This document shows, piece after piece, positions 3,877-44,999 of a DNA stretch of 64,000 nt. The position numbers and the translations under genes are program-made. Numbering within the stretch: position 1 is the first letter of the stretch; the number at the start of each line of letters is the position of its first letter. The notes under the pieces were generated by a model. The model saw nothing but the letters and a program-made list of their open reading frames with translations, searched no databases and had not been told where the DNA came from. The stretch lies in assembly GCA_965603825.1 (NCBI GenBank), contig CBFDEM010000023.1:620001-684000 (forward strand), read 5' to 3'. The stretch comes from Blepharisma stoltei ATCC 30299. Lineage: Eukaryota > Protista > Ciliophora.

Positions 3877-5235
3877 CTAAATCGGTGCTTTTCCTCTAGT
3901 AATCGGGGTATGAGAAGGCAGCCTATAGTTCTGAGGTCTGGACATAAAAATGTTCTGTATTGCATTGTTCCTATAAGATTTAGTTTTGCCTGAATCGTAG
4001 GTAACAGATGCTGATCTCGTTGAAGGTGTATAAGCCTGCATAAAGGTTACCCTATCTAAGCTTCTTCTCCTTTCAGGAGTTATTGATTGATTAGTTTTTT
4101 TAGCACTAACAAGCCTTTTAGCTTGCCCAAAATCTCCAAATTTTGCTATAAAGGATTCTTCTGGTGTTAATTCTGTTTTTTCTAAAAACTCGTCTTTTAA
4201 TTTTTTTAATAAATTTTGATTACTTTCACTGTTTCGCCAACTTTTGCAAATTAATTCCATATCAATTAAAAATTGCTGCTGGGGACCGAGAACACTTCCA
4301 GGGCGGCAAACCCTGATTCATCCAATAAAAGCTGCAGCTGAAATTTCATAATGCTTCATAGCATAACAAGCTATAAGAGTCCCAGTTCTTCCTAGTCCAG
4401 CTTTACAGTGGACTGCAATTCCACCTGGCTCAGTTTCAGCGATTTTTATGAATTTTTTTACGATTTCTTCAGACGGGCAGCTGCCATCAAGAAAATACAG
4501 CTCATAGTGGTTTATTCCTTCAGCCTTAAATCGGTTTGCTTCATAAGTCCTTTTATTTAGCCTTACGACAGTAGATATTCCTAATTTTTTAAAAACAGGA
4601 CAATAATCCTCAGGTGTAAAACATTTATACCCATCCCCATCAACATTATTTGGGCTTGGCGAGCTAAAAGCCAGCATTTTTTCTGGGATAATTCAGTTCA
4701 TATCTCCGTTTTCTATCCTTTGTAAATTCTCGTACTCTTCAAAATTAAACGTTTTCGGGTTAAATCAATTAAGCTTTAAAGCTCTTTCCAGCCCTTGAAT
4801 GCAATGCAATATTGTACATTTATAAGTACACATCCCAAACCCTGCATCTCTATAGTCAAGAAACCTCGGCAGCACAGAAAATGGCATTCATGCTGCTTCA
4901 CTTGTTTTATTAAGAAACAAAACTTGATACGCACACATTAAATAAGCTGCATTTGTCCTCTTTACGGGATCCAAAGCAGTATAATGAAAAATCTGATGCT
5001 GAGATAATGAAGGGTTTTTTATAAGCTTGTCTAGTTCGACGCAAAACCTATATGTCATTCCTAGGTTAATTGGTCCGAAATCTTGATTAAAAGGCTCATA
5101 GGTAAGCTCCTATATATCTTTTACATTATCTATACAGAAATATGAGGAATTCGCTTTGTTACGGGGTGGAGATTTGTTACTTATTCAGTAGAGTCGGTTA
5201 GGGATAATTTCAATGGCTTGATTGTAAGATAACAT
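3877..5235 (-). CDS. CDC14: CDC14 dual-specificity phosphatase, ~447 aa
   Basis: YEPFNQDFGPINL, NGDMN(TGA=W)IIP, VHCKAGLGRTG catalytic loop and (W)IRVCRPGSVLGPQQ; one intron at 5110..5124; ends at TAG. Confidence 0.95.
5110..5124 (-). other. 15-nt intron (CDC14)
   Basis: GTAAAAGATATATAG; contains an in-frame TAG; removal restores FCIDN-ELTYEPF. Confidence 0.9.
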
Positions 5236-5372: not shown

Positions 5373-8300
5373 ATGATAGTAAGAGGTTCAAGCATTAACC
5401 CCAGCTCTTTTATGAGGGTCGATAGCTATAACCCTGGCATTGAAAAACTGAGTGAAAAGGCACTTGGAACTGGTATTATCAAGAAAGAGAAAAATTTCAG
5501 AAAACATAAGAAAAAGCAGGACTTGGAAATGCAGACTTATATAAAATTAACATCCACAAGTGAGCATGATTTTCATACAAAATGAGCGATGCTAATCCTG
5601 ATAGTAAATTTATACAACATTTTTACAGCAACATATTTTCTAGGGATAAAAGGGTTTCCATCGTCTATATGGCTAGCTATTGAGCTTTCTTTTGAAATTA
5701 TTCTCTTATGTGATTATATTTCAAGATGAATTTTAAAAAATTTAGAAGTGTGGAGCCGTATGTGGATGCTCCATGAGAAGTCGACGTATTTGCATAATAT
5801 TTGCTTATTTATCTCGTCTATACCCTACTCATTCTTTTCCTTGATAATGTCTGTAAATCTAGATGGCTGGGGCGTTGCGATAGTCAGGATACTAAAAACT
5901 TTAAGGTTTTTTCAATTTTTTACATTTTTTGAAAACCAAGAAATTCTATTGAAAAAAGCATCTGGCGGTTTTCTTATGAAAGTATGCAAATATCTGATTC
6001 TTTTATTAGTAATTTTTCAGTCTACAGGAATGCTTCTACTAGTTGTAGGAAGAATTGAAGTTGAAAAAAATAACCCATACAATTGGCTACAGCCTTGAAT
6101 TGATGGGGACGCCCAAACATATGAAATTTATACAGACGCTTTTTATTGAGCAGCAAGCATGATATCAAGAATTTCTTATAACAGCCCAATCCCAAATACA
6201 GCAGGAGAAAAAGTAATTTCTGCACTTATTATGATACTTGGAGTTTTTACATGTGCTTTTATATGTGGACTGATTGTTCATATGCTGATTACAGTAAAAG
6301 CAAAAGATTTCGAGACAGAACAGAAACTAGAAAGAGCGAAAAAATGGTGCAGGCTGCGCCATATAAATTCTCATCTAAAAGTAAGGATTTTGGCGTATTA
6401 TTACTTTGTGAGGACTCAGTTTTCGCATTTTATTGACTGAGGATTCTTAGATGAGCTTCCTTTATCACTAAAAAGTGAAATTTCTGTGTCTATACATTCA
6501 GATATGATCCCTAAAGTCGCGATTTTTGAGATGGCGGACCCTTCTTTTGTACTGTCTATTGTAAGATGCCTAACACCTAAAGTATTTATGGCTGGAGACT
6601 ATATAATTAGGCAAGGAGACTATGCAGAAGAGTTATTTTTTATTAAAATAGGAACAGTTGAAGTGATTGCTGCAGATTCTGAAACCATTATAGCTTATTT
6701 AGAGGAAGGTGACTATTTTGGAGAGATTGGGGTATTATTAGACCAGAGAAGGTCACTATCAGTGAGGTCTTATAATGCGACAATGATATCGTCAATATCA
6801 AAAAATGACCTTATGCCTGTACTTCAAAACTATCCTGAATATCATGAATTTTTAAAAAATGTAGCTGAGCAAAGACTTAAAACTACAAACACCGAAGATA
6901 TTGATTACTTATGTGATCTACAAGTTGACGAGTCAGACTCTGATTCTTCAGACAGCTCTGACGAGAACACAGATCCCAGCTTTGGGACTCATATCGACCA
7001 CTCAGAAAAAACCTGCATCCAAAGGTTCATTTCAGTCGCCAAAACCAACGATGTCCAAGGGTCCTACATAATTGATCCTTTTTCTCAGTTTTTTTATATC
7101 TGGCTGCTTACTATATCCATTAGTTTTGGTTTTTATCTTTTTTATGTCCCATTTATAATTGCCTTTGAATATCCTGATTTTGATTTATGACTGTCATTTG
7201 ACGTTATAGCATACGTAATTTATATTGTTGATATCGCTGTATGTTCTAATACTTCTTTATATACAGAGCATGGGACTTATAACAGTGATATTGATGCAAT
7301 AAGAAGGAACTATTTAGAAAATTATTTATTAATGGATATAATTTCGTCAGTTCCTATTGATTTTCTATTAATAGCCTTTGACGCGCCTCGATATGCAGCA
7401 GCATTTTTTAAGCTTGTGAGGTTTTTTAAAGCGAAAAGAATTTGAAATTTATTAGGATTTTTGCAGCAGCATATGAAATCGTCTATAATATTGATAACTC
7501 TTATTGAGTCAATAACACTAGTTATATACTATGCACATTATGTAGCTTGTATTTCTTTTTATTTAGCAAAATTACAGTACTGAATTAACCCTAATACTAG
7601 GTTCAATAAAGAAAATTTCATTAACCAGTTTGCTCTTAACAACTACTATAACCCTGATGACACAATTCTAGATATCCCTATTTTCGACCAGTATGTAAAC
7701 TTACTTTATTTTGGCTACTCTATAGTAACTCTAGGGGTTTATGGAGATATCCCAGTCTGCACGACAGCTGAAAAAGTATTAAGCATGATATTTCTGATCG
7801 TGTCGACCATTTTAGAAGCATTTTTAATTAGCAGAGCTTGGAATCTTGCTACAAATTATCATAAAAATCATACAGAACACCTAGCAAAAGTGTCAATCAT
7901 AAAACAATGAATGAGCCATTGCAAACTTTCTAAGGATCTCCAGCAACGTGTGCTAAATTATTATAATCTTCTATGGACCAAGCTTCAAGGCTGTGATGAC
8001 GAAGAAATTCTTTTGGATCTTCCTGAGTCCCTCAGGACTGATATCCGATATTTCCTATTTGCAGGGCTAACCAAATCAGGGTTTTTCCCTGAAGATGAAA
8101 AAGGTGCTATTTTATCTATCATAAGAAGATGCAAACTTTCTATGGTATGTGGAGGGGAAAGAATAGTCACAGAAGGCGAACTTGGCTTAGAGATGTACTT
8201 TATTTTAGAAGGAGAAGTAGAAATAGTGTCCTCCACAGGCTTTGTGTTTAATACGCTAGGCAGTGGCATGGTTTTTGGAGAAATTGCTCTGCTTAAAATA

Positions 8301-11300
8301 GTTCCTTCTGTTAGAAGTGCAACCGTAAGAGCAAAAATTGACACAACTCTGGCTATACTGTCCATGAGTGATTTTAATTTTGTTATGAATAACTACCCTG
8401 ATTTTTCTCAAAAAGTAAGAAAAATTGCAGCAGAGCGAGAAAGAATGAACAGGGTTACTATGCAAAACAATAGTATGAAAGCACTGGTTACATATGTAAA
8501 TGACTCAGAAACGCTTAAATTTACATCATTGGAAAATAAAGAAGAAGAAAAACCGAAAGATATATCAAATGACCAAGATGAAAATAATGCAACGCAAGAT
8601 AATATGGAAACTAAAATATTCCCGAATGGAGATGTCCCTGTTTATGTGTTCCAGTTTAACCCACTTTTGGTCAAATTTCATAGCTATAGATGGAAGCAGT
8701 TTGTATATTTTATCGTGAATTTTTATAATTTCGTATGGATGCCGCTCCAAATTGCGTTTGAGTACAAGTATGAGCATTGGTCGATCAGCTTGGAAATCTG
8801 CTCAATGGTGATTTATTTAATCTTTGGCATGTATTATTGGATGTTATATGATGTAATATCTAAATGCCCACATTCAGCAGTAAAAAAGAAATTTCCTAAC
8901 GTCAAGCCTAAAACAGCCTTTTGAAAATCCGTCCACAATTTTGTTTTATTTCTCCCATTTGCTATGATATTTTCGCTAAGCGAGACACCAGAGCCAAGAT
9001 GGATAATATCAATACTTTCAATAATAAGAATTTCTGGAATTTACTGTGTGGTTGAAGTTTTTGATTATTTAAAACATAGAATGAAATATTTTATTTTTTT
9101 CAGATTTTTTGAAGTAGCTGTAATATATTTCATGGCTAACCATTTATGTGCATGCTTTTTTATTGAAATTGGTAGAAGTGAAGATACAGTCCACTCATGG
9201 TTTTATAAAATTTATTTATCAAAAAGTAACTTTAGCGTACATGATTCACTGTCAAATTCCACAATTTTGGTCCATGCTTACCATTGGGCTTCTATGGTTG
9301 TGTCCCATGTTGGGTATGGATATATTACTAGTGTGTCTCCTTGGGAAAAAGTTTATAACTGTTTTATGTTCCTTCTAGGATTTTTTGTATTTATTGTGCT
9401 TTTTGGAAGCATTTGTTCACTGTTCAAGGAGCTTATTTCGAATAGGAGGTATAAGCTTAAAGATAATTATGAATATGTCAGGGATTTCATCAAGAAGAAA
9501 AAAGTTGACCAACAATTCATGAAACAGATAAATGACTATTTTAATTATTTATGAAAAGCAAATAAAGGAATAATTGATCAAGATATCCTTAAACATCTGA
9601 CACCGACTCTTATGTCTGATATACAACTTTATAGGTATAGGGAAGCTGTTCAAAATTCTCAATTGTTTAGGAAAAAGGATGGAAAAATACATGAGCAGCT
9701 GGCGAGAACAATGTTTAGACTTTGCCATACAGAATTTTATTTAATTGGGGACCCAATTATGCATGGTGGTGAAAGGAATAACGATTTTTTTATTATGCTA
9801 GATGGTGAAGCTGATATTATTGATATTAGAGGAAAAGCTAATGTAAAAACACTTAAAACGGGTGACCATTTTGGAGAAGTTGGCTCATTTATTCCTGAAA
9901 TCCCAGTTAGGACAGCAAGTGCAGTTGCAATTAAAATTTGCCAAGTAGCCAGGCTAAAAGCTGATCAGCTTGAAATGCTAATGGATGCATTCCCTGAATG
10001 ATATGAATCTATGCAAAAACTAGCTGAAAACAGGATAAAAGAAACATTTTGCGCAGAGAGCATCGAAGAAGCTATCGCAAAATTTGATAAAATAGCTAAA
10101 AAAATTTCAAATGATCCAAGCACAGCCAAAAAGTACCAAAAAAGAACAGAAAAATTAATGGCGCCCAAAATTTCAAAAATCCTATCAATAGAGCCAAGCA
10201 ATAGATGAATGAATTTAACTTTGCTTCACATGGCTACTCTAATATACACAGCCTTTGCCCTTCCTCTTGAAGTATGCTTCAATATAAAACTAAACTATTT
10301 TCTCTATATAATGGAAGTTATCTGTGTATCAGAATCCATAGTATTTTTTGCAATAATTACAAAATATACTATTTTCTCAAGGAAAAAAAAGAATGATGAA
10401 GAAATGGATATTGAGCATCATAAGCATTTTATTATTTTCGACATATTAGGAATGTCGCCTTTTAACTTGATATTTGACATGATGAGAATTGAGCACCCGT
10501 TTTACCTTATTATTTTATTAAGATTATTGAGGATTGCTTCAGTGTTTAGGCTTCAGTCATTGTTTTCGAAGATGGAAATGCAGTGGAGACATATATCGTT
10601 TATTTTGAACTGTATAAAAGCGACAGTTATAGCGGTCATTTTTATCCATTGGCTAAGCTGCTTGTGGTACTTTATGAATTGGCAAGAAGATGGATATTCC
10701 TGGGCTGAGTCTAACCATCTAGAAGATTCGACAACCTGAAATAAGACCTCATTTTCATATTTTTATATACTAAATATCCTAACCTTGACAGGCTACTCTT
10801 TTATGCAAGAAGCCAATGATACTGAAAGAGTGGTCACGATTTTCCTGATTTTTATAGGAGATATGCTTATCGCTATGCTTTTTGGGTTCATGGCAACTGT
10901 CATTGAATCCCACAAATCTGAATTACAAGACTACATTAATAAGCTGAATTCACCATTTAGTGTCACAAATAAATCTGAAAAATCTGAACAATTAATGAAA
11001 AAGCTAAAATCATTTTATGCATTTTCTACATCTTTAAGCCAGGTGCATGGGCCAATTGATTTTAATCAGTTATATATGTATTTGCCATCGAATATTGTGA
11101 ATTCGATTATTTATGAGTGCAATAGGCCAGTTCTTAAAGAAGTGACATACCTTCAGCTAACAGATTCTGTAGAACTGTATGAAAGTTTGGCTATGTTGCT
11201 TAAGCCAAGATTATTTTTACCAGAAGATTATATCATATATCATTATGATTTTGGCTGCGAAATGTTTTTTATTATAGAAGGGTCTGCTGAAATACGATCT

Positions 11301-11864
11301 ATAGATGGCAAAAAAACAATAAAAACTCTAACAAAAGGCTCTGTAGTTGGAGATATTGAATTAATTACTGATGAAAAGCCTTTTTACTCAGTTGTCGCTA
11401 AAACTTTATGCTTAAGCTATTTTGTGGGTAAGACTGATTTTCATAAACTGGTTATTCAGTTTCCTGATATTTCTGAACAAATTAAGTTAGAAACAGAAAA
11501 ACTAAGAAGGGAAAGGACAGATTTAAATGTGATTATTGAGCAAGATTCTTATATAGAAGAAGATGGATCCCCGCTTGTAAACTCTCAGGACATTATTAAT
11601 TCTATGACTATATATAAGTTAGTGAATTTCCCTATTATTCAAGAAGCGAGTGACACGAACTGGATTGGAGCTTATTCAGGGCTCAAAAATTTAAACTCAC
11701 AGACAATTAAAAAGCCTGGAACATTAGCTATAACAAAAAAGTCATCAAAAAGAAGACCGCACTATTCAAAAGAGCACAAAAGAAGGTTTAGTAGAGAATT
11801 TATTGGGAAAGAAATCATGATATCAGAGCTTTCTTCAATTTCGATTAAAACAGATAAACCTTAA
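5373..11864 (+). CDS. Four-repeat (pseudo-tetrameric, CNGK-like) cyclic-nucleotide-gated cation/K+ channel, 2163 aa
   Basis: Ten ORF-track pieces all lie in one frame and are separated only by TGA (14 by my count), with no TAA/TAG until 11862-11864. There are four 6TM + pore + C-linker + CNBD units (FGEIG..RS, FGEIA..RSA, FGEVG..RTA, VGDIE). Confidence 0.9.
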
Positions 11865-12027: not shown

Positions 12028-13473
12028 ATGCCAGGCAAAGGTAAAGGCAAAGGAGCCAAAGAAGGTAAAGGCAAAGGTAAAGGCAAAGGCAAAGGTAAAA
12101 AAGGTGGTGAGGCCGAAGCCCGCCGCAAGGCAGAAGCGGTCGAAGACATCGAAAGCGAAGAATACAAAACCAACCTCATGCTTGAGCTCGCAGAGCTCCA
12201 AGAAGAAGCCAAAACTGAGAACGGCTTTGCTTCTCTTTACCAACAAGAAAGAGAGCGCATCAACTACTTCTGGATGGCCGAAAAAAAGCTTCTTGAAGAA
12301 AAGCAAGCCGATTACCGCAATAAAGAATGAAGCCTCCAAGAACTTCGAGAAAAGCACGACATTGAGATTAACGTCTGCAAACAAAGGGTCAAGCACTTGC
12401 TATTTGCATCTCTTGACAACTTAACTGAAGAGAAAACCCAAGCTGAAATGGGCCTGAAAAACTCAGAAGATGAACACAGGCTGAAACAGAGAGAGCTTAA
12501 ATATGACGTAAGGGCACTTAAAGTACAAGAAAAAGAAAAAGAGGTCTGTCAAGATGACTATTTAAGATCACTTAAAAAAGATGAGGACAAAAAGAAAATG
12601 GAGCTGAGGCACGAATTCGAAAGACAGGCTATTGACTTAAAAGATAAATACACAGAAAAAATGAACAGGCTGAGGATTGACATGGAAGAAAAAAAGAAAA
12701 GAATCATTGAACAAATTGAAGCTAAAATGAACGCAGCCATCAAAGATTTGACCAAAACACACCAACAAAAGCTGCTTGATATACAGAATTACTATAAAAA
12801 TATAACAGATTCAAATATTTCTCACATAAAGCAGCTACAAGAAGACGTGGTTAGGCTTAGGAAATTAGAGGTGGCTGACTTGAAGACCTTACACAAGCTT
12901 CAATATGAAAATAAACATTTCGTGAACCCTCTAAAAGAAACCCAGCTGAAAGTAGAAGAGAAGAAAAAAGAGCTTGAGCAATATTTGAAAGACAAAGAAG
13001 AACTCCATACCACATTTAAACGTATTACAGACATTGAAGAAGAAATCAGAAATTGGACCTGGGAGTATGAAGTTTTACTACAAGAGCATGATTACATAAT
13101 GAAAGAAAGAGATGAAATCTATGCAAGGTTCCAAGACTCTATATTAGAAGTTCAACAAAAAGTTGGCTTACGAAACCTAATTCTTGAAAAGAAATTAGAA
13201 ACAATTCAAGAAACACTTGAAGCCAAAAATGTTCAGCTTTATCAAATCCTGCAATCAGCCCAGCTTAGACCAGAAGCAATTGCAATGGTAACTTCTTCCC
13301 TTGAAGACGTAGAAAACTCTAAAAATGAACAAATCGCCGCAATTCAAACTGAGCTGAAGAAAATCAGAGAAGCACACAGCAATATGGTGAAAACCTATGA
13401 AGGGAAGCTGTTTGAGTTTGGAATTCCTGTCGAGGAGCTTGGCTTTGATCCTCTTGTCCCTGCTAATGTTTAA
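12028..13473 (+). CDS. GAS8: GAS8/DRC4 (trypanin) nexin-dynein regulatory complex subunit, 481 aa
   Basis: GK-rich N-terminus, QQERERINYFW, KQRVKHLL, VQQKVGLRNLILEKKL and YEGKLFEFGIPVEELGFDPL; ORFs joined through TGA 12328-12330. Confidence 0.92.
12031..12110 (+). repeat. Coding (GGY AAA)n Gly-Lys repeat
   Basis: ggcaaaggtaaaggcaaa... encodes GKGKGKG..GKGKGKGKGKGKK at the GAS8 N-terminus. Confidence 0.8.
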
Positions 13474-35189: not shown

Positions 35190-36740
35190 ATTTATTATTA
35201 TTCTATACAATTCCATAATTTGTGCATGCTTTACTATTTATTCAACATTTTACTATTATATTTTAGGTATATTTTGATAATTCTGGAATGCAAATATCTT
35301 CTGTAAATGGTGCTTCTAATATATTTGCTTACAATAAATAAGTCATTTAAAATACAATTAAAAGACTTCGCACGAATAAGTGATATAATCAAAAAGGGTA
35401 GTAGGTATTAATGACAAAATTTTACTCAATTATAAATGCACATTACCCAACAACTTCAATCTGAAGTACGTGCATATTATATATATAGTGTAAATGAAAA
35501 GAGGACGTCATAAGCCTAATATTTCAACTTTTTATTATTTTAAATTAAATTCATCCTTAGACGAGAAGAAGGACAGGCATAGCAATTAATGATAAACATA
35601 ATTAAATCCAATAAGTTTTCTCCAAATGCAATTCATTATATATAAGAAAGATATATGATCTGAATTTTTGTCTGGAGAAGACCTTAAAGCTGAATATGCT
35701 GCTGGTGCATAATTCTTTTTCTAGGATTCAAGAATTTATTTAGTTCGCCTATTGATTTATTCAGAATAAGAACAATTTTAATAGAAATTAAGCATACAAG
35801 CGAAAGAAGGGCAAGTATAACTTTTAGAAATTCCACAGCTTAGATGACATTAAAATTGACTAGAAAATTTAGCTTTCCTAATATTTATTTAGCTTTAGTA
35901 TTAAATATGGCCATTAGTTCGCCAGAATCAATTTTCTTGCACTCAGAAGTTATGTGATTTATAACATTCTTAATTTAAGGATAAAATCTTGGTTTGTTCA
36001 AAACAAATATTTAGATAAGCAATTAGATAAATGGAGCTTAAAGTTCATGCTTTAGCGAAATTATAAAATCTCTTTGACATGAATTTTTGATAAACGAATT
36101 AAGGTATGAAGAAAAATTGAAAATGCATTTTATTAAGTTTTCTTACTCCAAGAATACTTTAATTAGGAAAAAATTTATCAAGATCATTAGCTGGATGCAC
36201 AGACGTCATCTTTATTCTGTGTTCCATATTCCTTTCCTAAAGCCTAAATTTTCTAATAAGATAAACTTTTATTTGATGCCTTTTATATAATAAAATATCC
36301 AGAAAACTCTCCTCTGATTATGCAAAAAAATCTTTTCAATAAAATTTGATGAAATTGACCTATAAATATGATAAAGTGATCATTAAATTTGATAATTATT
36401 TCTTAATAAATATTTGCTTAGTTTTAGGCTACTCTTTAATGTTTATCGCTATTTAGGCGAAAAAATACCTTTAACTATAAATGTAATTCATGTTTCATGA
36501 GTAAAAATTCTTCACAATTAATATTTAACCATCTCATATTGATGCATACAGAATTTAGCGTAGGCTCGCAAAATCGCTATCATACCAACGATTTAAAAGC
36601 CAGAAGTCGCTACTGCGGCTTCATAGTAATATGATAGCATTTTTAATAAAATACATAAATATTAAAAGGTTCAAAGCATATCTTGAACTCGTTTCAATTC
36701 AATTCATCTATAATTTCTAGCATTTAATGCATTATAAAAT

Positions 36741-39700
36741 ATGTCGAAACTAATTCTGTTTTGGTTTCTCTTGCCGTTCTCCCTACTTCAAGCGGTAGAA
36801 CTTGATGATTCAGTTTTAGTCAATGACGGAACAGACGTTTATATCGAATTTACTTTAGTTCCAAAAAGTCACGCCAAAAAGCTAAATCAGCAGTCAAAAA
36901 CAGACACTAAAAGACTTCTTCAGGACAATTCAGAATCCTGTGAAAAAGAAATGATAATTGATGCAACTCTCTTTAAGTTTAGCACTGGATGCTGTCCCAA
37001 ATCTACTTATTTTGATGGGAAAAAATGCATTCCTTGTCCTGATGGATGTGTGGACTGTAAAGATATTACTGGAGAATGTATCAATTGCAGACCTGAGCTT
37101 GCATTAGATGTAGAAATAATTAGGAAGAGTCCTTGTTGCTTGGAAGGGTCTTTTTATAGTGGATCTGGCTGTGAGAAATGTCCTGAAAATTGTTTAAGCT
37201 GTAATAGCACAACCTCATGTGCTCGGTGTCGATCTGAAATGACTGCTGACATTAAAATTAAAAGCAAAAAATCTTGTTGTCCTAAAGGCACATTTTATAA
37301 TGGCTCTGAATGCGCTTCTTGCACTCCTAATTGCTCTGAGTGCGAGGATATAACTCAAAAATGCATAAGTTGTGAGAAAGAAATGGCCTTAGACATAAAA
37401 ATAGCAAATTCTAAGCCTTGTTGTAGCCCTTCGAGCTACTATAATGGAATTAAGTGCATGCCTTGTCCTGAAAATTGCTTGGAATGTGATGATTTTGGAA
37501 TCTGCAAGACTTGTGATAAAGAGATGGATCTTGATATTACTATAAAAGGCAAAGGAAAGTGTTGCCCTAAAGGCCAATTATATAATATCATAGAAAATGA
37601 ATGCAAATCATGCTCGCCAAATTGCCTAGAATGTGAAAAGCTAGGGAGCTGCAGCACTTGTGATAAAGAAATGACTCTTGATCTAGCTATAATTATTCCC
37701 AAAAAATGTTGCCCTCAAGGACTATTTTATGATAAAATTGAAAAAATCTGTAAATCGTGTTCTACTAATTGCTTAGAATGCGAAAAATCTAATGAATGCC
37801 AATCTTGCGATAAAGAAATGACGCTTGACATGATTCTTGTAAGTAGATCAAAATGTTGCCCGAAAGGAAAATTCTATGACTTAGCAGAAAATATATGCAA
37901 AACATGTTTAGGTGGCTGTTTAGAGTGTGAAGGACCAAGTAAATGCAATTCTTGCGACAAAGAGATGACTCTTGATATTGCTATTTCGAATTCTAAAAAA
38001 TGTTGCCTTGAAGGAGAATTTTATGACTCAACTCAAAAAATATGTAAGTCATGCTTACCCAATTGCTCAGAATGTGATGGTGAAAGTGACTGTCAATTGT
38101 GTGAAAAAGAAATGACTGTTGATACAACTATTATAAGCTCAAAAATGTGCTGTCATCAAGGACAATTCTATGACAAAAGCGAAAACGGATGCAAGCCATG
38201 CTCAGATAACTGTTTAGAGTGTTCTGGAAAAGATAAGTGCTATTCTTGTAAAGAAGAGATGACTTTGGACTTAGCCATTAGCAAGACCAAAAAATGCTGC
38301 TCTCCTGGGGAATTTTATGATAAAAAAGAGAAGATATGTAAACCTTGCTCTGCCAACTGCTTTGATTGCGAAGATTCAAATGATTGCAAATCATGCGATA
38401 AAGAAATGACTGTTGACACTACTATTATAAGCTCGAAAAAATGCTGTCCTTCAGGACAATTTTATAGCACTCCAGATCATGAATGTAGGCCTTGCTTATC
38501 CAACTGTTCATTTTGTGATAATCCAGATAAATGCCGATCTTGTGATAAAGAAATGACTCTTGATGCGCAAATTGTCAGCTCTAAAAAATGTTGTCCTGAA
38601 GGAGAATTCTATGATTTTTCTACAAAAGGATGCATCCCTTGTTCAGAAAATTGTTTAGCATGTGAAAATGCAAATGAGTGCAGTTCTTGCCAAAAGGAAA
38701 TGATTCTTGATATTGAAGTATTGGGCATTAAGAAGTGCTGCCCTACAGGCCAATTTTATGATAAAGCTGAAGATTTATGCAAAGATTGCTCAAGCAATTG
38801 TTTAGCATGTGAGGGACAAAGTGATTGTAACTCTTGCGAAAAAGAAATGACTCTTGAAACTCTTATTGTCAGCTCTAAAAAATGTTGTCCGCCAGGACAA
38901 TTTTATGATTCTTCAGGGAAAAAATGTACACCTTGCTCAGATAACTGTTTAGACTGTGATGATCTAAGTGATTGCAAATCTTGTGGCAAAGAAATGACCC
39001 TGGATATAACTCTTACAAGCTCATCAAAATGCTGTCCTAAAGGAGAATTCTATGATTTGGCTGAAAATGAATGCAAGTTATGTTTGGGTAACTGCTTAGA
39101 GTGCGAAGGGCCAAGCAAATGCAGATCTTGCACTAAAGATATGACTCTTGATATAGCGATTGTCAGCTCAAAAAAATGTTGTCCTGATGGTTATTTTTAT
39201 AACTCTACTCAAAACGCATGCCAATGTAGCCCTGGAAATTATTTTAATGGAAGCAAATGTTTGCCTTGCCCTAAAGGTTGTATTGAATGTGAGGATATAA
39301 CAGGAATCTGCAAAGACTGCAGCAATCAAATGATCGTAGATTTGAAAATAAAAAGCTCTAGGTCCTGCTGTTCTTCAAGCCACTACTATGATGGTTTGGA
39401 TTGTCAACCTTGCCAATCAGGCTGTTTAAATTGCAAAGACATATCAGGTGAATGCTATTCCTGTAAGCCAGAAATAGCTCTCGATGTCGCTATTATCAAA
39501 AAAACTACTTGTTGCCCAGATAAGCATTATTCTGATGGTCTTAACTGTCTTCCTTGCGGGATTATGTGTGATGACTGTATTTCAGCTACAAACTGTTCTG
39601 CTTGTGACGACCAAAATTTACAAGAAGTAGATTTGCTTAGCCCAGGGAATTGCAAATGTGTCGGATCTGCTTATTATGATGGAGAAACATGTCAAGCTTG

Positions 39701-42700
39701 CAGCTTTTTGTGCTCAGTTTGCAATGCAACTGAATGCAGCCAGTGCATTGATTCGGCCAATATGATCCAAGATCCATCAAATATTAGTAGCTGTAAATGC
39801 AAGGAACAATTTTATTATGAAAATACTACAAAGCTCTGCCAGCCTTGTATGGAGAACTGTCTTACTTGTTTTGATGCTTCTTCATGCACTCAATGCAAAT
39901 CTGGCTATTATTATGATGGATTTTCATGCCTGATATCAAGCTGCCCTAATGGAACATACATAGAAAATAATACTTGCACGGATTGCATAGCTCCTTGTGC
40001 TACCTGCTATAATTCTTCTTTTTGCTATTCTTGTATAAATCCAGAAATAATGGTATTAAATCCTACATCTGGGGTTTGCTCGTGCCCATCTGGCCAGTTT
40101 TATGACGCTAATTCGCAAGAATGCAGCTCTTGTAAAAGTCCTTGCTCAACTTGTTTTGAGTCTGCTGATTTCTGCTTAAGTTGCATTGACTCGACGATGG
40201 ATTATGATTCAACTTATGGAACTTGCTTATGCCAAGTGTCTAAATATCTGGAATCTGAAAAATGTATTGACTGTGTAAGCCCATGTGAGACTTGTTCATC
40301 ATCGGATTTCTGTTTAAGCTGTGCAGATTCTGCTATGGTTTATGATGAAATATCTGGAGTTTGTGCCTGTCCTGATAAAAAATACTTTAATTATTCTACC
40401 AAATCATGTGAAGATTGTGAAGGAATCTGTGAGAAGTGCTTAAATTCAACATTCTGCCTTACTTGTAAAGATTCTACGATGACTTATAACTCAACTACAG
40501 GGACGTGTAGCTGCCCTTCAAATTATTATTTTAACAAGGATAGCTTATCTTGTCAAAGCTGCCATGAAACCTGTGAGGACTGTTTAGACTCAACTTCATG
40601 CACCTCTTGTATAGACTCTGCCATGAAATATGACAATAATACAAAGCTCTGCACTTGTGGCGAAACTCAATACTTTAACTCAGCAGCAAAAGCTTGCCAA
40701 GACTGTAAAGGTCCTTGTAAGTCTTGCACATCGGAGACATTCTGCACTTCTTGTCTTGATACATCTACCCTTGATATTTCCACAGGAACTTGCTCTTGTT
40801 CTCAACATGAATATTTTAATGCTTCTCTTTCTCAATGTAAAGAATGCTCTGGGCTATGCTCAACCTGTTTATCTGATGCTATCTGCGATTCATGTGTCTC
40901 TAATACCAATCCAATAAATAATGGGATTTGCTCATGCTTAACAGGGTTTTATCTTTCATCCAAAGAATGCTTGCAATGTCCTTCTCCATGTTCTTCATGC
41001 TCTAGTAATACAAAGTGCGACACTTGCAAAAGTCATGCTTATCTTGATTCAACTGACCAGTTTTGTCACTGTCAAACTGGCTTTACGCTTAGCAGTTCTG
41101 ACTCTTCTGGCTACTGCAAAGCAGATTGCAATAGTTATTGCACAGAATGTGACATTGATAATGGAAATAAATGCTCCAAATGTATTACAAATGCAGAGCT
41201 CTCAGAGACAACTTGCTCTTGCACTGAGAACTCCGCTTATGATAGTGCTACTAAAAGTTGTCTTTGCAATAGTGGATATATTCTGTCTAACAGTAAATGT
41301 GTGGCTTGTAAGAAATATCTTTCCCCAACTGATATAAAATCAGCAGATTTCAGCTCGGCATGGACTTATCTTTATGTCTACTTCAACGTCAAACTTGATA
41401 CCTCACTAGATCCAGGCTGTTCCAAAGTATTTGAGGCTTCAACTTATGTTTTACTTGGAAGCAGCCCAATTTGCTCTTGGGCAGATTCCAAGACACTTAA
41501 GGTGGCTCTAGGAACTTATTATGGGCTAAGAACACAAACTATTTACCTTGATGGGACATATCTTGTTAAAGATACCACAGATTCCTGCACAACTGCATAT
41601 CAGCCGCTTTCTATAGCTATTTCATCAACTGCACCACCTTCTCCAATTGCTGTTATTAGTGGCCAAACAAATCTTTACTTAAGCTGTGGGACAGATGCTC
41701 TTGTATATTCTGGCGAAAGATCTCAAATGGGGTTAGGCTCTCCTCTATCTTATAGCTGGTCTGCTCGTATTTCTCCATCTAATAAAAGCCTACTCGATTT
41801 CATAACTTCTCAGAATACTCCTTCTATCTCCATTTCTAGATCATATTTCCCTACATCTGTATCTACCACTTTAGCTGTTACTTTAAATGCAACCAATTTC
41901 CTAGGGTACTCAAACCAAGCATCGCTTACGACCACTATTAATGCAGGCAGCGCTTTGTCTATTATATTTGACCAGGGCAACTCAGTCAGTATGTGGTATT
42001 CCTCATCAAAAACCCTCAAAGCAAAAATCACCTCATATTGCTCCACTTTTACATCCAGCCCTGCTTCCTGGACATGGAGTTATGATACATCTACAAGTCC
42101 TTCTATCAACTATGATGCAATACTTAAAAACGCTAAATCTGATAAATTGACGATCCCAAAAAATACTTTACCTGTAGGAGGGCCATATACTTTTATTGCT
42201 TCTGCTTCACAAGTGAATGCTAATGCTACATTGACTGGAAGTGGCAAGGTTTCTATAACAGTCACTGCTTCACCTTTAATTATTCAGTTGTCGAAGACCA
42301 GCGGTGATGTTTCTCCCAGCGAAGATTATATAATAAACGCTATTGGCTCAAAAGACCCTGATGATCCCAATGGAACCTTAAATTATAAATGGATTTGCCA
42401 AAATAGCGAAGACGAGTCAGACTGTTTAGGAAGTGACGGAGAAATACTGCTAGTTGATGAAACAGCTGCAACTTTGACAATTCCTACAAGTAGGATGGTT
42501 AAAGGAGCCTTATGGGACATTATCTGCACGATTTCAAAAGACACTCGAAGTGCAAGCGCAATGGTAGAAATCAACATTTTGAATATTTCCACTGAAATCT
42601 CTATTGCAATAACCATGACTTTGCAAAAATTCAGTCCTCAGCAAAACATTCAGTTTTCAGCATCTATTAATTCTAATGCTCCTGCTCAAATTCTTTGGTC

Positions 42701-44999
42701 AGAAAAAACAGGTGCAGATATTTCTATTTCTCCGAATTATCTATCATCTATTTCATTCCCATCTAGCTCTCTGATAGAAGGCTCCAGCTATATTTTTACT
42801 CTTACCATCACAATAGACTCCTCAAATCTGCAATTCGTTACTCAGCTGCCAGTCACAGTAAACTCAGGGGCTTCCTGCTCTGGGGATTTCATATTAAGCC
42901 CAAGCAGCGGCACAGCCTTAGTCACTATGTTCAATCTCGGGATTTCTGGCTGCTATGACAAAGATGAGTCAGACTATCCATTAACATATACATATTTCGA
43001 TGCCTGAAATAGCAAACTTTATGTCCTTGGCTATACCTCAGAAACCAATTCTATACAAGCTTATTTGCTTCCTAATAAAAACAGTCTGACTGTCCACGTT
43101 TGTGATAGTCTGAAAACGTGTGCGGATTACTCAACTGAAATAACTACATCAGAATATTCCAGCAGACTGTTACAAACTTCTTCATTAATGGATGCATATT
43201 TGATGAATATAATAGATACTGATAATATTCCATCTACTATAGCCATTTTTTGTAGCTCTGCTACAATTGAGGCTTCTTTGTTTTCTCAGATGTGGAGTGA
43301 CTTACAGAGTTATGTGGAAAATAATGATATTGATGAAAATTTGCTAGGAAGTGTGCTAGGATCGGTCTATGCGATGGCGGGACAGACTAGTTTAGTGACT
43401 ATTGAGATGTTCCAGAGTATGTTTGACTGGCTTGATGGAATACTTTCTGATAATCCTACAGTAGTGCCTACACAAGAAAATATTAAAATTGTTGTAGCTC
43501 TAGTAGATGATTATCTTTTGTATGGGAATTCTACTAATTATGAGGGAAAAGCTTTAGAAGAGTATATAATAGCTGCTGACAAATTCCTATCAACTTGGAC
43601 AGTTGCAGCTACTGCTAACGATTTGGTAACTCAGAGCGCACTAGATGGCTCTCAAAATACAATTCAGACTAAAGTTTTTAAGCATAGAAACTTCCCAAGT
43701 GCAATGACTAATAAAACGATTTCTCTAGGAGAAAATAGGACTGTCTCATTCCCATCTCATTTTAGCTATCCAGATACAGATATTATGAACATCAAGGTTG
43801 ACTATTATAACACCTCAAATGATTATTCAGACGTTGCAGTACTTAGTTTTGCTCAATCTGGAGCTTATAAAAGCTATGCGTTAACAAAATCAGCAGAAGA
43901 GTATGTCCCATTTTCAAGCCAGGATTATCCAGTAACGTTAGAAATGCCGATTTATGACAGTATTGAGGATGGCTATAACTGGACTTGTGTATTTTATAAT
44001 GAAACTGATAAAGACTGGGTATATGATGGCTGTAGCATCAAAGAAATCAAAGAGAAAAGCATCATTTTCGAAGTTTATCATTTCTCTATGTACAAGCTCG
44101 GCCAAACCAAAATCGCAATCCCTGACCTCCCAACCCCTACAGACTCAGAATCATGCCCTCAGAACTATGCTCCTGTCTATATTTTGGCATCTGTGTTTTT
44201 CTTTATTCTGATTTTAATTCCTATAATAATCTTTTTGGACCGGGCTGATCATAAAGAAAAACGCAGCATTAAAGTGGCTCCTGTTAATTCCCCTGCAGAT
44301 CGCAGTTTAGATAATTCTCAACAAAAGAATGATAATCTGCATTTCGGACAAAATACTTTTGTTCAAGATTTAGATGGATCTGTTGAGATAAAGCACGAAG
44401 AAATTGTTGAAAGAAGAGATATTATTCTAGAAGAACCAAAAATAGACGAGAAAATAGAATTAGAGTCTGAGGACGTGTCTAAAACTGAGCTTGCTCTGCT
44501 GTTTGAAGGTCACTTAGTTTTTGGGTTGATATACTATAGAAAAAATTATTCAAGAAAAGCTAGACTATTTGTATTGGGAACTGTTATTGTTTTTGAGCTT
44601 TTCTTAGAAGGGCTTCTGCTGTATGTTTTTGAAAATACTAAGTCAGGATTCTCAGCATCAGCTGAGACTCTGTTTGGAGACTACGAAGGGAAATATTTCG
44701 CTTATATCGTTTTGGCGCTTGGGATTACAATACCTATTGAAATATTCTTAAGCTTGGTGTTTAGCACTAGAAGAATTAAGACTCTAGGCTTGCTTGTTAC
44801 CGTTACTTCAATAGAAATTATCATACTCCTTGGATCACCTATTGGTATTATAATGCTGAGCAACATATTCTGCTCGGAATGGAGTGGATATTGGGCAATT
44901 AGCTTCCTCTACGGAACTCTCTTACAAGTATTTGGATTCGAAACAATTTATATGTGTGTGAGGTATTTTATACTTCAAGCAGTTCCTCGAAATAATTAA
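36741..44999 (+). CDS. Giant polycystin-1/REJ-like membrane receptor (Cys-rich repeats, REJ-like region, GPS motif, ~5 TM), 2752 aa
   Basis: Two ORFs joined through TGA 43005-43007. Signal peptide, Cys repeats, REJ-type motifs (S.DPDD....L.Y.W.C; C.....P.SG.AL.T.F), GPS-like WTCVFYNETDKDWVYDGC...HFSMY, then TM segments. Confidence 0.88.
36938..39590 (+). repeat. About 18 tandem ~49-aa (~147-nt) Cys repeats, consensus CDKEMTLD..I.SSKKCCP.GQFYD...CK.C..NCL.C.....C
   Basis: Counted directly in the translation; bounds approximate. Confidence 0.85.

What the first reader, a model, noticed from the sequence alone, without database searches (positions are those of the whole stretch)
5373..11864. 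Single-polypeptide four-repeat CNG/K+ channel with four different, mostly non-canonical selectivity filters
An intronless 2163-aa frame holds four 6TM-CNBD units, the architecture of the CNGK channels of sea-urchin and fish sperm. Instead of four TxGYGD filters it has RISYNS (6168-6185), LGVYGD (7731-7748), HVGYGY (9306-9323) and LTGYSF (10785-10802). This implies an asymmetric pore with possibly novel selectivity, analogous to how four-domain Ca/Na channels diversified. It is a candidate for cyclic-nucleotide-dependent motility or photophobic signalling in heterotrichs (inference). Standard-code annotation hides it as ten fragments.
Basis: partly seen in the sequence, partly recalled or inferred. 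Interest (0 to 1): 0.8.

Follow-up and report, generated by a model that had tools for sequence, protein, structure and literature searches.

The report
Ciliate four-repeat cyclic-nucleotide channel, drifted pore
This is a real, intact gene of the ciliate Blepharisma for one protein that strings four different ion-channel units together; it belongs to an old, apparently undescribed ciliate family that joined its units separately from the animal sperm channel CNGK and lacks the usual potassium filter, and this copy's pore has changed further than those of its closest relatives.

Summary
Confirmed. 5373-11864 is one 2163-aa frame (TGA = Trp, 14 times) with four 6TM-CNBD units. The four hexamers sit at filter positions in the fold models. 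Contigs of probable RNA runs show no splicing and bridge all three junctions. It is not a CNGK member: same-position orthology with CNGK repeats is rejected for all four repeats, and only 3 of 74 family units keep [TS]xG[YF]G. It belongs to a family shared by Blepharisma (three intact genes), Stentor and Tetrahymena, whose repeats are specialised by position: His at the filter Thr position of repeat 3 (51/53) and an intact phosphate-binding cassette in repeat 1 (30/30). R, L and L in repeats 1, 2 and 4 are private to this copy, whose pore branch is 4-5 times longer than those of its three nearest relatives. Most likely a cyclic-nucleotide-gated, poorly K+-selective cation channel; a non-conducting copy is the main rival. 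The protein is already deposited at full length. No paper describing the family was found. This scan noted the family before on a paralogue (s1-634291).

The parts
5373..11864 (+). Single ORF, 2163 aa, TGA read as Trp (14 times); four 6TM-CNBD units
5556..6896 (+). Repeat 1 (aa 62-508): S1-S6, C-linker, CNBD
6168..6185 (+). Filter 1 RISYNS; nearest relatives TIGYND/TIAYND; Arg at the first position in 1 of 29 family units
6720..6755 (+). Phosphate-binding cassette of CNBD1 (GE...RS), intact in 30 of 30 family members; best candidate ligand site
7074..8459 (+). Repeat 2 (aa 568-1029); the most charged S4 (5 R/K here, family mean 4.4)
7731..7748 (+). Filter 2 LGVYGD; nearest relatives SGAYGD, Tetrahymena mostly QGAYGD
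8277..8318 (+). CNBD2 cassette GE...RS, intact here
8667..10058 (+). Repeat 3 (aa 1099-1562); S4 nearly uncharged (1 Arg)
9306..9323 (+). Filter 3 HVGYGY; His1312 is the family hallmark (51 of 53 repeat-3 units)
9873..9914 (+). CNBD3 cassette GE...RT, intact here, degenerate in one paralogue and in Tetrahymena
10188..11525 (+). Repeat 4 (aa 1606-2051)
10785..10802 (+). Filter 4 LTGYSF; nearest relatives CTGYGF/CTGYGG
11349..11387 (+). CNBD4 cassette degenerate (GD for GE, Lys at the Arg position); probably binds no nucleotide

Best explanation
The gene encodes a complete pseudo-tetrameric channel: four 6TM-CNBD units in one chain, each giving one pore loop (shown by sequence and fold models; assembly of the four around one pore is inferred from CNGK and Cav/Nav). 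It belongs to an old ciliate family in which each repeat has its own fixed role (shown). Gating is most likely by a cyclic nucleotide bound to CNBD1, the one site intact in every member, with Thr/Ser after the Arg, which by established knowledge of CNG channels favours cGMP; CNBD2 and CNBD3 may add to this here, CNBD4 not; voltage dependence is probably weak because only repeat 2 has a well-charged S4 (inferred). With no ring of four TxGYG loops and a His in place of the Thr of repeat 3, the pore is probably not K+-selective but a non-selective or weakly selective cation pore, so opening would depolarise rather than hyperpolarise, possibly in a pH-dependent way (inferred, untested). This copy rebuilt its pore helices, filters, turrets and S6 after it split from its nearest relatives while its sensors and nucleotide domains changed at the normal rate (shown), so its conductance or selectivity probably differs from that of the two paralogues (inferred).
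For: One open frame and TGA = Trp. Contigs of probable RNA runs bridge all junctions without joints. Allelic differences are 32 synonymous to 8 non-synonymous against 24% synonymous expected. Each unit folds like CNGA1/HCN. Same-position repeats of paralogues are 44-59% identical, repeats within the protein 19-25%. Four position clades span Blepharisma, Stentor and Tetrahymena, each 100/99-100. [TS]xG[YF]G in 3/74 family units against 35/39 CNGK-clade units and 26/27 single-unit channels of this genome. His in 51/53 repeat-3 units. CNBD1 cassette 30/30. Pore branch 0.44 against 0.09-0.10 in the three nearest relatives, with similar branches in VSD and C-linker/CNBD.
Against: No current, ligand binding or localisation has been measured. 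Filter sequence predicts selectivity only loosely in an asymmetric pore, and no four-repeat model was built (1200-aa limit). The ratio of pore to CNBD change in this copy (about 1.6) is within the range of more distant family members (0.9-1.6), so the pore may be weakly constrained across much of the family. Arg, Leu, His, Leu at the inner filter position could block the pore. The RNA nature of the runs is a guess and contigs do not prove one transcript. Family counts include about ten close Tetrahymena genes, so they are not independent.
Confidence: 0.58

Rival explanations
1. This copy no longer conducts ions. It is kept as a membrane-bound cyclic-nucleotide sensor, scaffold or regulator, and its pore drifts under relaxed selection.
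For: Private changes are concentrated in pore helix, filter and S6 (51 of 68 private changes among four relatives) and include Thr to Arg, Gly to Ser, loss of outer Asp, and a Glu in S6 of repeat 2. Three CNBDs stay intact.
Against: His1312 is kept; all helices are intact in the models; allelic changes in S5 and turret are 9 synonymous to 0; similar pore-to-CNBD rates occur in other family branches. In P-helix to S6 only one listed SNP falls (non-synonymous), too few to judge.
Confidence: 0.2
2. Despite the sequence, the family or this copy is still K+-selective and works like CNGK, hyperpolarising on cGMP.
For: Backbone carbonyls make the K+ sites; GYG or YGD remnants persist in repeats 2-4; some members keep GFGD or GYGD in up to three repeats (P0189).
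Against: No repeat of this copy matches [TS]xG[YF]G; by established knowledge, single changes at the Thr or first Gly (weaver-type Gly to Ser, as in repeat 1 here) abolish K+ selectivity.
Confidence: 0.1
3. The pore is charge-reversed or proton-controlled: His (repeat 3) plus Arg (repeat 1) at the inner mouth with only one outer Asp left make it anion-permeable or shut at acid pH.
For: His is nearly invariant and is replaced by Lys in one of the two exceptions; this copy adds Arg266 and loses outer acids in repeats 1, 3 and 4.
Against: No precedent known to me in this superfamily; the side chains may point away from the pore; Arg266 is private.
Confidence: 0.09
4. The ciliate genes and CNGK descend from one four-repeat ancestor, and the trees mislead through long branches or homogenisation of CNGK repeats.
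For: A sister relation of all ciliate units with all CNGK units is not rejected (p-AU 0.45); the mixture-model tree did not finish; four-repeat CNBD proteins also occur in stramenopiles and Rhodelphis.
Against: Same-position clades with CNGK are rejected: repeat 1 p 5e-7, repeat 2 1e-4, repeat 3 5e-11, repeat 4 0.016; CNGK units form their own clade at 100/100.
Confidence: 0.1
5. Artefact: separate genes, an assembly error or a pseudogene.
For: Two broken partial copies of a paralogue exist in this genome; one contig shows a 1-nt insertion at 5734, 15 nt from its end.
Against: 6.5 kb with no TAA/TAG; full-length collinear relatives in many species, including standard-code ones; purifying selection on alleles.
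Confidence: 0.02

Closest known systems
CNGK (tetraKCNG) channels of animals and choanoflagellates (PMC4749565, PMC7576140)
   Same: Four 6TM-CNBD repeats in one chain; not all CNBDs functional.
   Different: CNGK has GYG/GFG in its pores and is K+-selective; the sea-urchin channel is gated through CNBD3; its repeats are described as unspecialised (PMC6259924). Here the filters differ by position, the conserved site is CNBD1, and no repeat is the orthologue of the same CNGK repeat.
[quoted passage not shown]
   Same: Tandem 6TM-CNBD units with repeat-specific clades, in SAR protists.
   Different: Two repeats; that survey found deviations from TVG[YF]G rare and reported no tandem channels in ciliates.
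Metazoan CNG (CNGA1/CNGB1, TAX-4) and HCN channels
   Same: Best sequence and fold matches per unit (about 22% identity, TM-score up to 0.86); ligand-gated, weakly or non-selective; rod and olfactory CNG are asymmetric heteromers.
   Different: Single-unit subunits; TIGE or CIGYG filters; no His at the filter Thr position.
Four-domain Cav/Nav/NALCN channels
   Same: One chain, four position-specialised pore loops.
   Different: No CNBDs, another filter type; an analogy only.

Membership tests
CNGK | Four 6TM-CNBD repeats in one polypeptide | tested here: met
CNGK | Canonical GYG/GFG K+ filter in the repeats (PMC4749565) | tested here: not met
   0 of 4 match [TS]xG[YF]G, 1 of 4 has GYG; family 3/74 against 35/39 in the CNGK clade
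CNGK | Repeats fall in the CNGK clade, orthologous by position | tested here: not met
   AU tests reject all four positions; LG+G4 only
CNGK | Repeat 1 related to 3 and 2 to 4 (PMC7576140) | tested here: inconclusive
   best tree joins 3+4 (98/87); a 1+3 clade is not rejected, p-AU 0.245
CNGK | K+ selectivity; gating by cGMP or pH | not testable with these tools
   needs electrophysiology
CNBD channel superfamily (CNG/HCN/KCNH/CNGK) | S1-S6 with pore loop, C-linker and CNBD fold | tested here: met
CNBD channel superfamily (CNG/HCN/KCNH/CNGK) | Phosphate-binding cassette GE...R for nucleotide binding | tested here: met
   present in CNBD1-3, absent in CNBD4; binding itself untested
Stramenopile four-repeat CNBD proteins (Cantina, Platysulcus) | Repeat 3 orthologous to their atypical repeat 3 | tested here: inconclusive
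   weakly rejected, p-AU 0.029, with two stramenopile rows only
Ciliate four-repeat CNBD family (undescribed) | Position-specific repeats, His at filter position 1 of repeat 3, intact CNBD1 | tested here: met

The most novel reading that the evidence does not exclude
Ciliates, and perhaps chromerids and Rhodelphis, have a separately evolved 24-TM cyclic-nucleotide-gated channel family whose asymmetric pore uses a single His as a selectivity or pH element not known in any studied channel; this Blepharisma copy has retuned that pore again (Arg/Leu/His/Leu) to a different ion, possibly an anion.
Probability: 0.25. Interest if true: 0.88.

Novelty: new variant of a known kind. Interest (0 to 1): 0.7.

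Why it matters
Four-repeat CNBD channels were described only as the K+-selective CNGK of animals and choanoflagellates; a 2020 survey found no tandem channels in ciliates and a 2018 review held that CNGK repeats never specialised. This family shows a second route from a K+-channel scaffold to a one-chain asymmetric pore, the step that produced Cav and Nav. Because one chain makes the whole pore, it can be expressed and mutated loop by loop, and Tetrahymena members can be knocked out. It offers candidate genes for cyclic-nucleotide-gated conductances in ciliates, and this copy against its paralogues is a natural experiment on the filter.

Tried and rejected
Other codes: TGA-only-stop and standard codes fragment the window; TAA/TAG-stop gives long frames throughout. 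Tiny introns: 14 GT-AG 15-mers lie in the frame, but contigs show no joints and the paralogue alignment shows no matching insertions. Self-BLAST of the whole protein showed no internal repeats; they appear only when units are compared apart. The word search with a stop-free piece found only fragments, so the one large search was used. A simple filter-versus-rest test of private changes was not significant (p 0.15); the signal appears only against the relatives' own rates and for the whole pore. The C20 mixture tree did not finish. The ESM Atlas gave only generic CNBD-channel clusters. No solved structure of a four-repeat CNBD channel among the best 60 matches. Nine paper searches found no description of the family or of SteCoe_14822; the library lacks most subscription papers. 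A photophobic role could not be supported from the library. No whole-pore model was built.

Full report
Source and code. The window lies in a 41.46-Mb, 64-contig genome of about 34% GC. A stretch of this genome is 100% identical to a record of assembly GCA_914767885.1, which from my own knowledge is the Blepharisma stoltei macronuclear genome. Long frames appear only if TAA and TAG are stops and TGA is sense; 9 of the 14 TGA codons of this gene face Trp in both paralogues.

The observation. 5373-11864 is one frame of 2163 codons; the four hexamers are at the stated places. Pfam finds four cNMP-binding domains and ion-transport domains, and a unit profile places four complete units at aa 62-508, 568-1029, 1099-1562 and 1606-2051. 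AlphaFold2 models of each half are confident (pLDDT 86-87) and put each hexamer directly after a pore helix; the fold matches CNGA1, HCN and TAX-4. The exact protein is already in NCBI/UniRef, so the remark about hidden fragments holds only for standard-code gene callers.

One live gene. Contigs of four runs guessed to be RNA cover 5382 onward, show no joints, and bridge repeat 1-2 (6766-7128), 2-3 (7360-9091) and 3-4 (9028 to beyond 11339). The 40 listed allelic differences are 32 synonymous and 8 conservative or minor replacements, against 24% synonymous expected, so the gene is under purifying selection.

A family. The genome has two more intact four-repeat genes of 2127 aa and two broken partial copies of one of them. 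Collinear relatives occur in Stentor coeruleus (OMJ84131.1), in Tetrahymena thermophila (EAR89827.2, EAS07210.2, EAS07209.2 and more on the same contig), in other Tetrahymena species and in many metagenomes. Each repeat forms its own clade from Blepharisma to Tetrahymena (100/99-100), so the four-repeat form and the division of roles predate the split of these lineages. Two Chromera velia units and a Rhodelphis marinus protein lean towards the family (repeat 3 clade, SH-aLRT 97 and 94; Rhodelphis has the His), on long branches; that is a lead only.

Not CNGK. CNGK units form a separate clade (100/100). Forcing each ciliate repeat together with the same CNGK repeat is rejected (p-AU 5e-7, 1e-4, 5e-11, 0.016). 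A sister relation of the two whole sets is not rejected (0.45), which would mean a related single-unit ancestor but separate quadruplications. These tests use LG+G4; the mixture model did not finish, and the joining of all ciliate units in one clade may owe something to long branches. I left out units covering less than most of the profile.

The pore. Only 3 of 74 family units keep [TS]xG[YF]G, against 35 of 39 CNGK-clade units and 26 of 27 single-unit channels of this genome. The conserved pattern is by position: repeat 3 has His at the Thr position in 51 of 53 units, repeat 2 ends in YGD after a non-Gly, repeat 4 keeps GY, repeat 1 is the most variable. About ten close Tetrahymena genes inflate these counts. 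CNBD1 has GE...R[T/S] in 30 of 30; the other three sites are lost in various branches, CNBD4 in all Blepharisma-type copies. S4 carries on average 2.7, 4.4, 1.4 and 2.8 basic residues.

What is special to this copy. Its three nearest relatives (two paralogues and a gene from another TGA = Trp species, L036, 57% identical) share nearly the same filters, and this copy differs from all three at 7 filter positions. At columns where the other three agree it differs in 30% of P-helix-filter-S6 columns; the same count for each of the others is 3-6%; VSD, C-linker and CNBD give 10-21% in all four. With outgroups its pore branch is 0.44 against 0.09-0.10. However, more distant members show similar pore-to-CNBD rates, so the unusual ones may be the three conserved relatives, and relaxation cannot be told from positive selection.

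How it most likely works. Shown: architecture, intact fold, conserved CNBD1, position-specific filters. Inferred: a cyclic nucleotide, probably cGMP, binds CNBD1 and opens a weakly voltage-dependent pore that lacks the four-fold K+ cage and passes cations with little selectivity, with the His as a possible pH or selectivity element; this copy has altered conductance or selectivity (0.58). Rivals: non-conducting sensor (0.2), still K+-selective (0.1), anion- or proton-controlled (0.09). A role in motility or light responses is untested; the neighbouring GAS8/DRC4 gene is not evidence.

Novelty. PMC7576140 lists four-repeat CNBD channels only for metazoans and choanoflagellates and found no tandem channels in ciliates; PMC6259924 states that CNGK repeats show no specialisation; PMC4749565 defines CNGK by GYG/GFG. 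I found no paper on this family. The layout is known, the lineage and pore are not: a new variant of a known kind, interest 0.7.

Noticed in passing
L001:1348-7731 (+), L002:2005-8388 (-): Two intact four-repeat paralogues of 2127 aa in the same genome with nearly identical filters (TI[GA]YND, SGAYGD, HAGYGW, CTGYG[FG]).
   Followed up: yes
L003:2460-5887 (-), L010:3150-5618 (+): Two broken partial copies (repeat 3-4 part) of the L002 gene, about 96% identical, with frameshifts and stops; the deposited annotation calls the L003 copy as three short proteins.
   Followed up: partly
P0040, P0043 and about 50 other proteins: Further four-repeat 6TM-CNBD proteins in stramenopiles (Cantina, Platysulcus; long Phytophthora proteins also hit) and unnamed marine eukaryotes, in at least three groups; in two groups repeat 3 also has an odd filter (VVIGD, VCFGD). 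One protein (P0160) has six units. These seem undescribed too.
   Followed up: partly
P0060 (Rhodelphis marinus), P0104 (Chromera velia): Possible non-ciliate members: Rhodelphis repeat 3 carries the His; two Chromera units group with repeats 3 and, unsteadily, 4.
   Followed up: partly
Tetrahymena thermophila contig of 367,094 bases: At least five four-repeat genes on one contig, apparently a tandem cluster, with strongly conserved filters (GS[SC]FGD, QG[AS]YGD, HVGVGD, TCGYP).
   Followed up: no
window 12028-13473 (+): GAS8/DRC4 gene (PF13851), a ciliary dynein-regulatory subunit, 164 bases downstream; not shared as a neighbour in the related loci checked.
   Followed up: partly
window 3877-5109 (-): Upstream gene 49% identical to a dual-specificity phosphatase-like gene two genes upstream of the channel in metagenome locus L011, a trace of shared gene order.
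   Followed up: partly
window 36738-44999 (+): A 2753-codon frame with no Pfam match in its two stop-free pieces; an earlier scan note calls it polycystin-1-like.
   Followed up: no
window 5734: One contig of run X3 has an extra A here, 15 bases from its end; probably an error, possibly a frameshifted allele.
   Followed up: no
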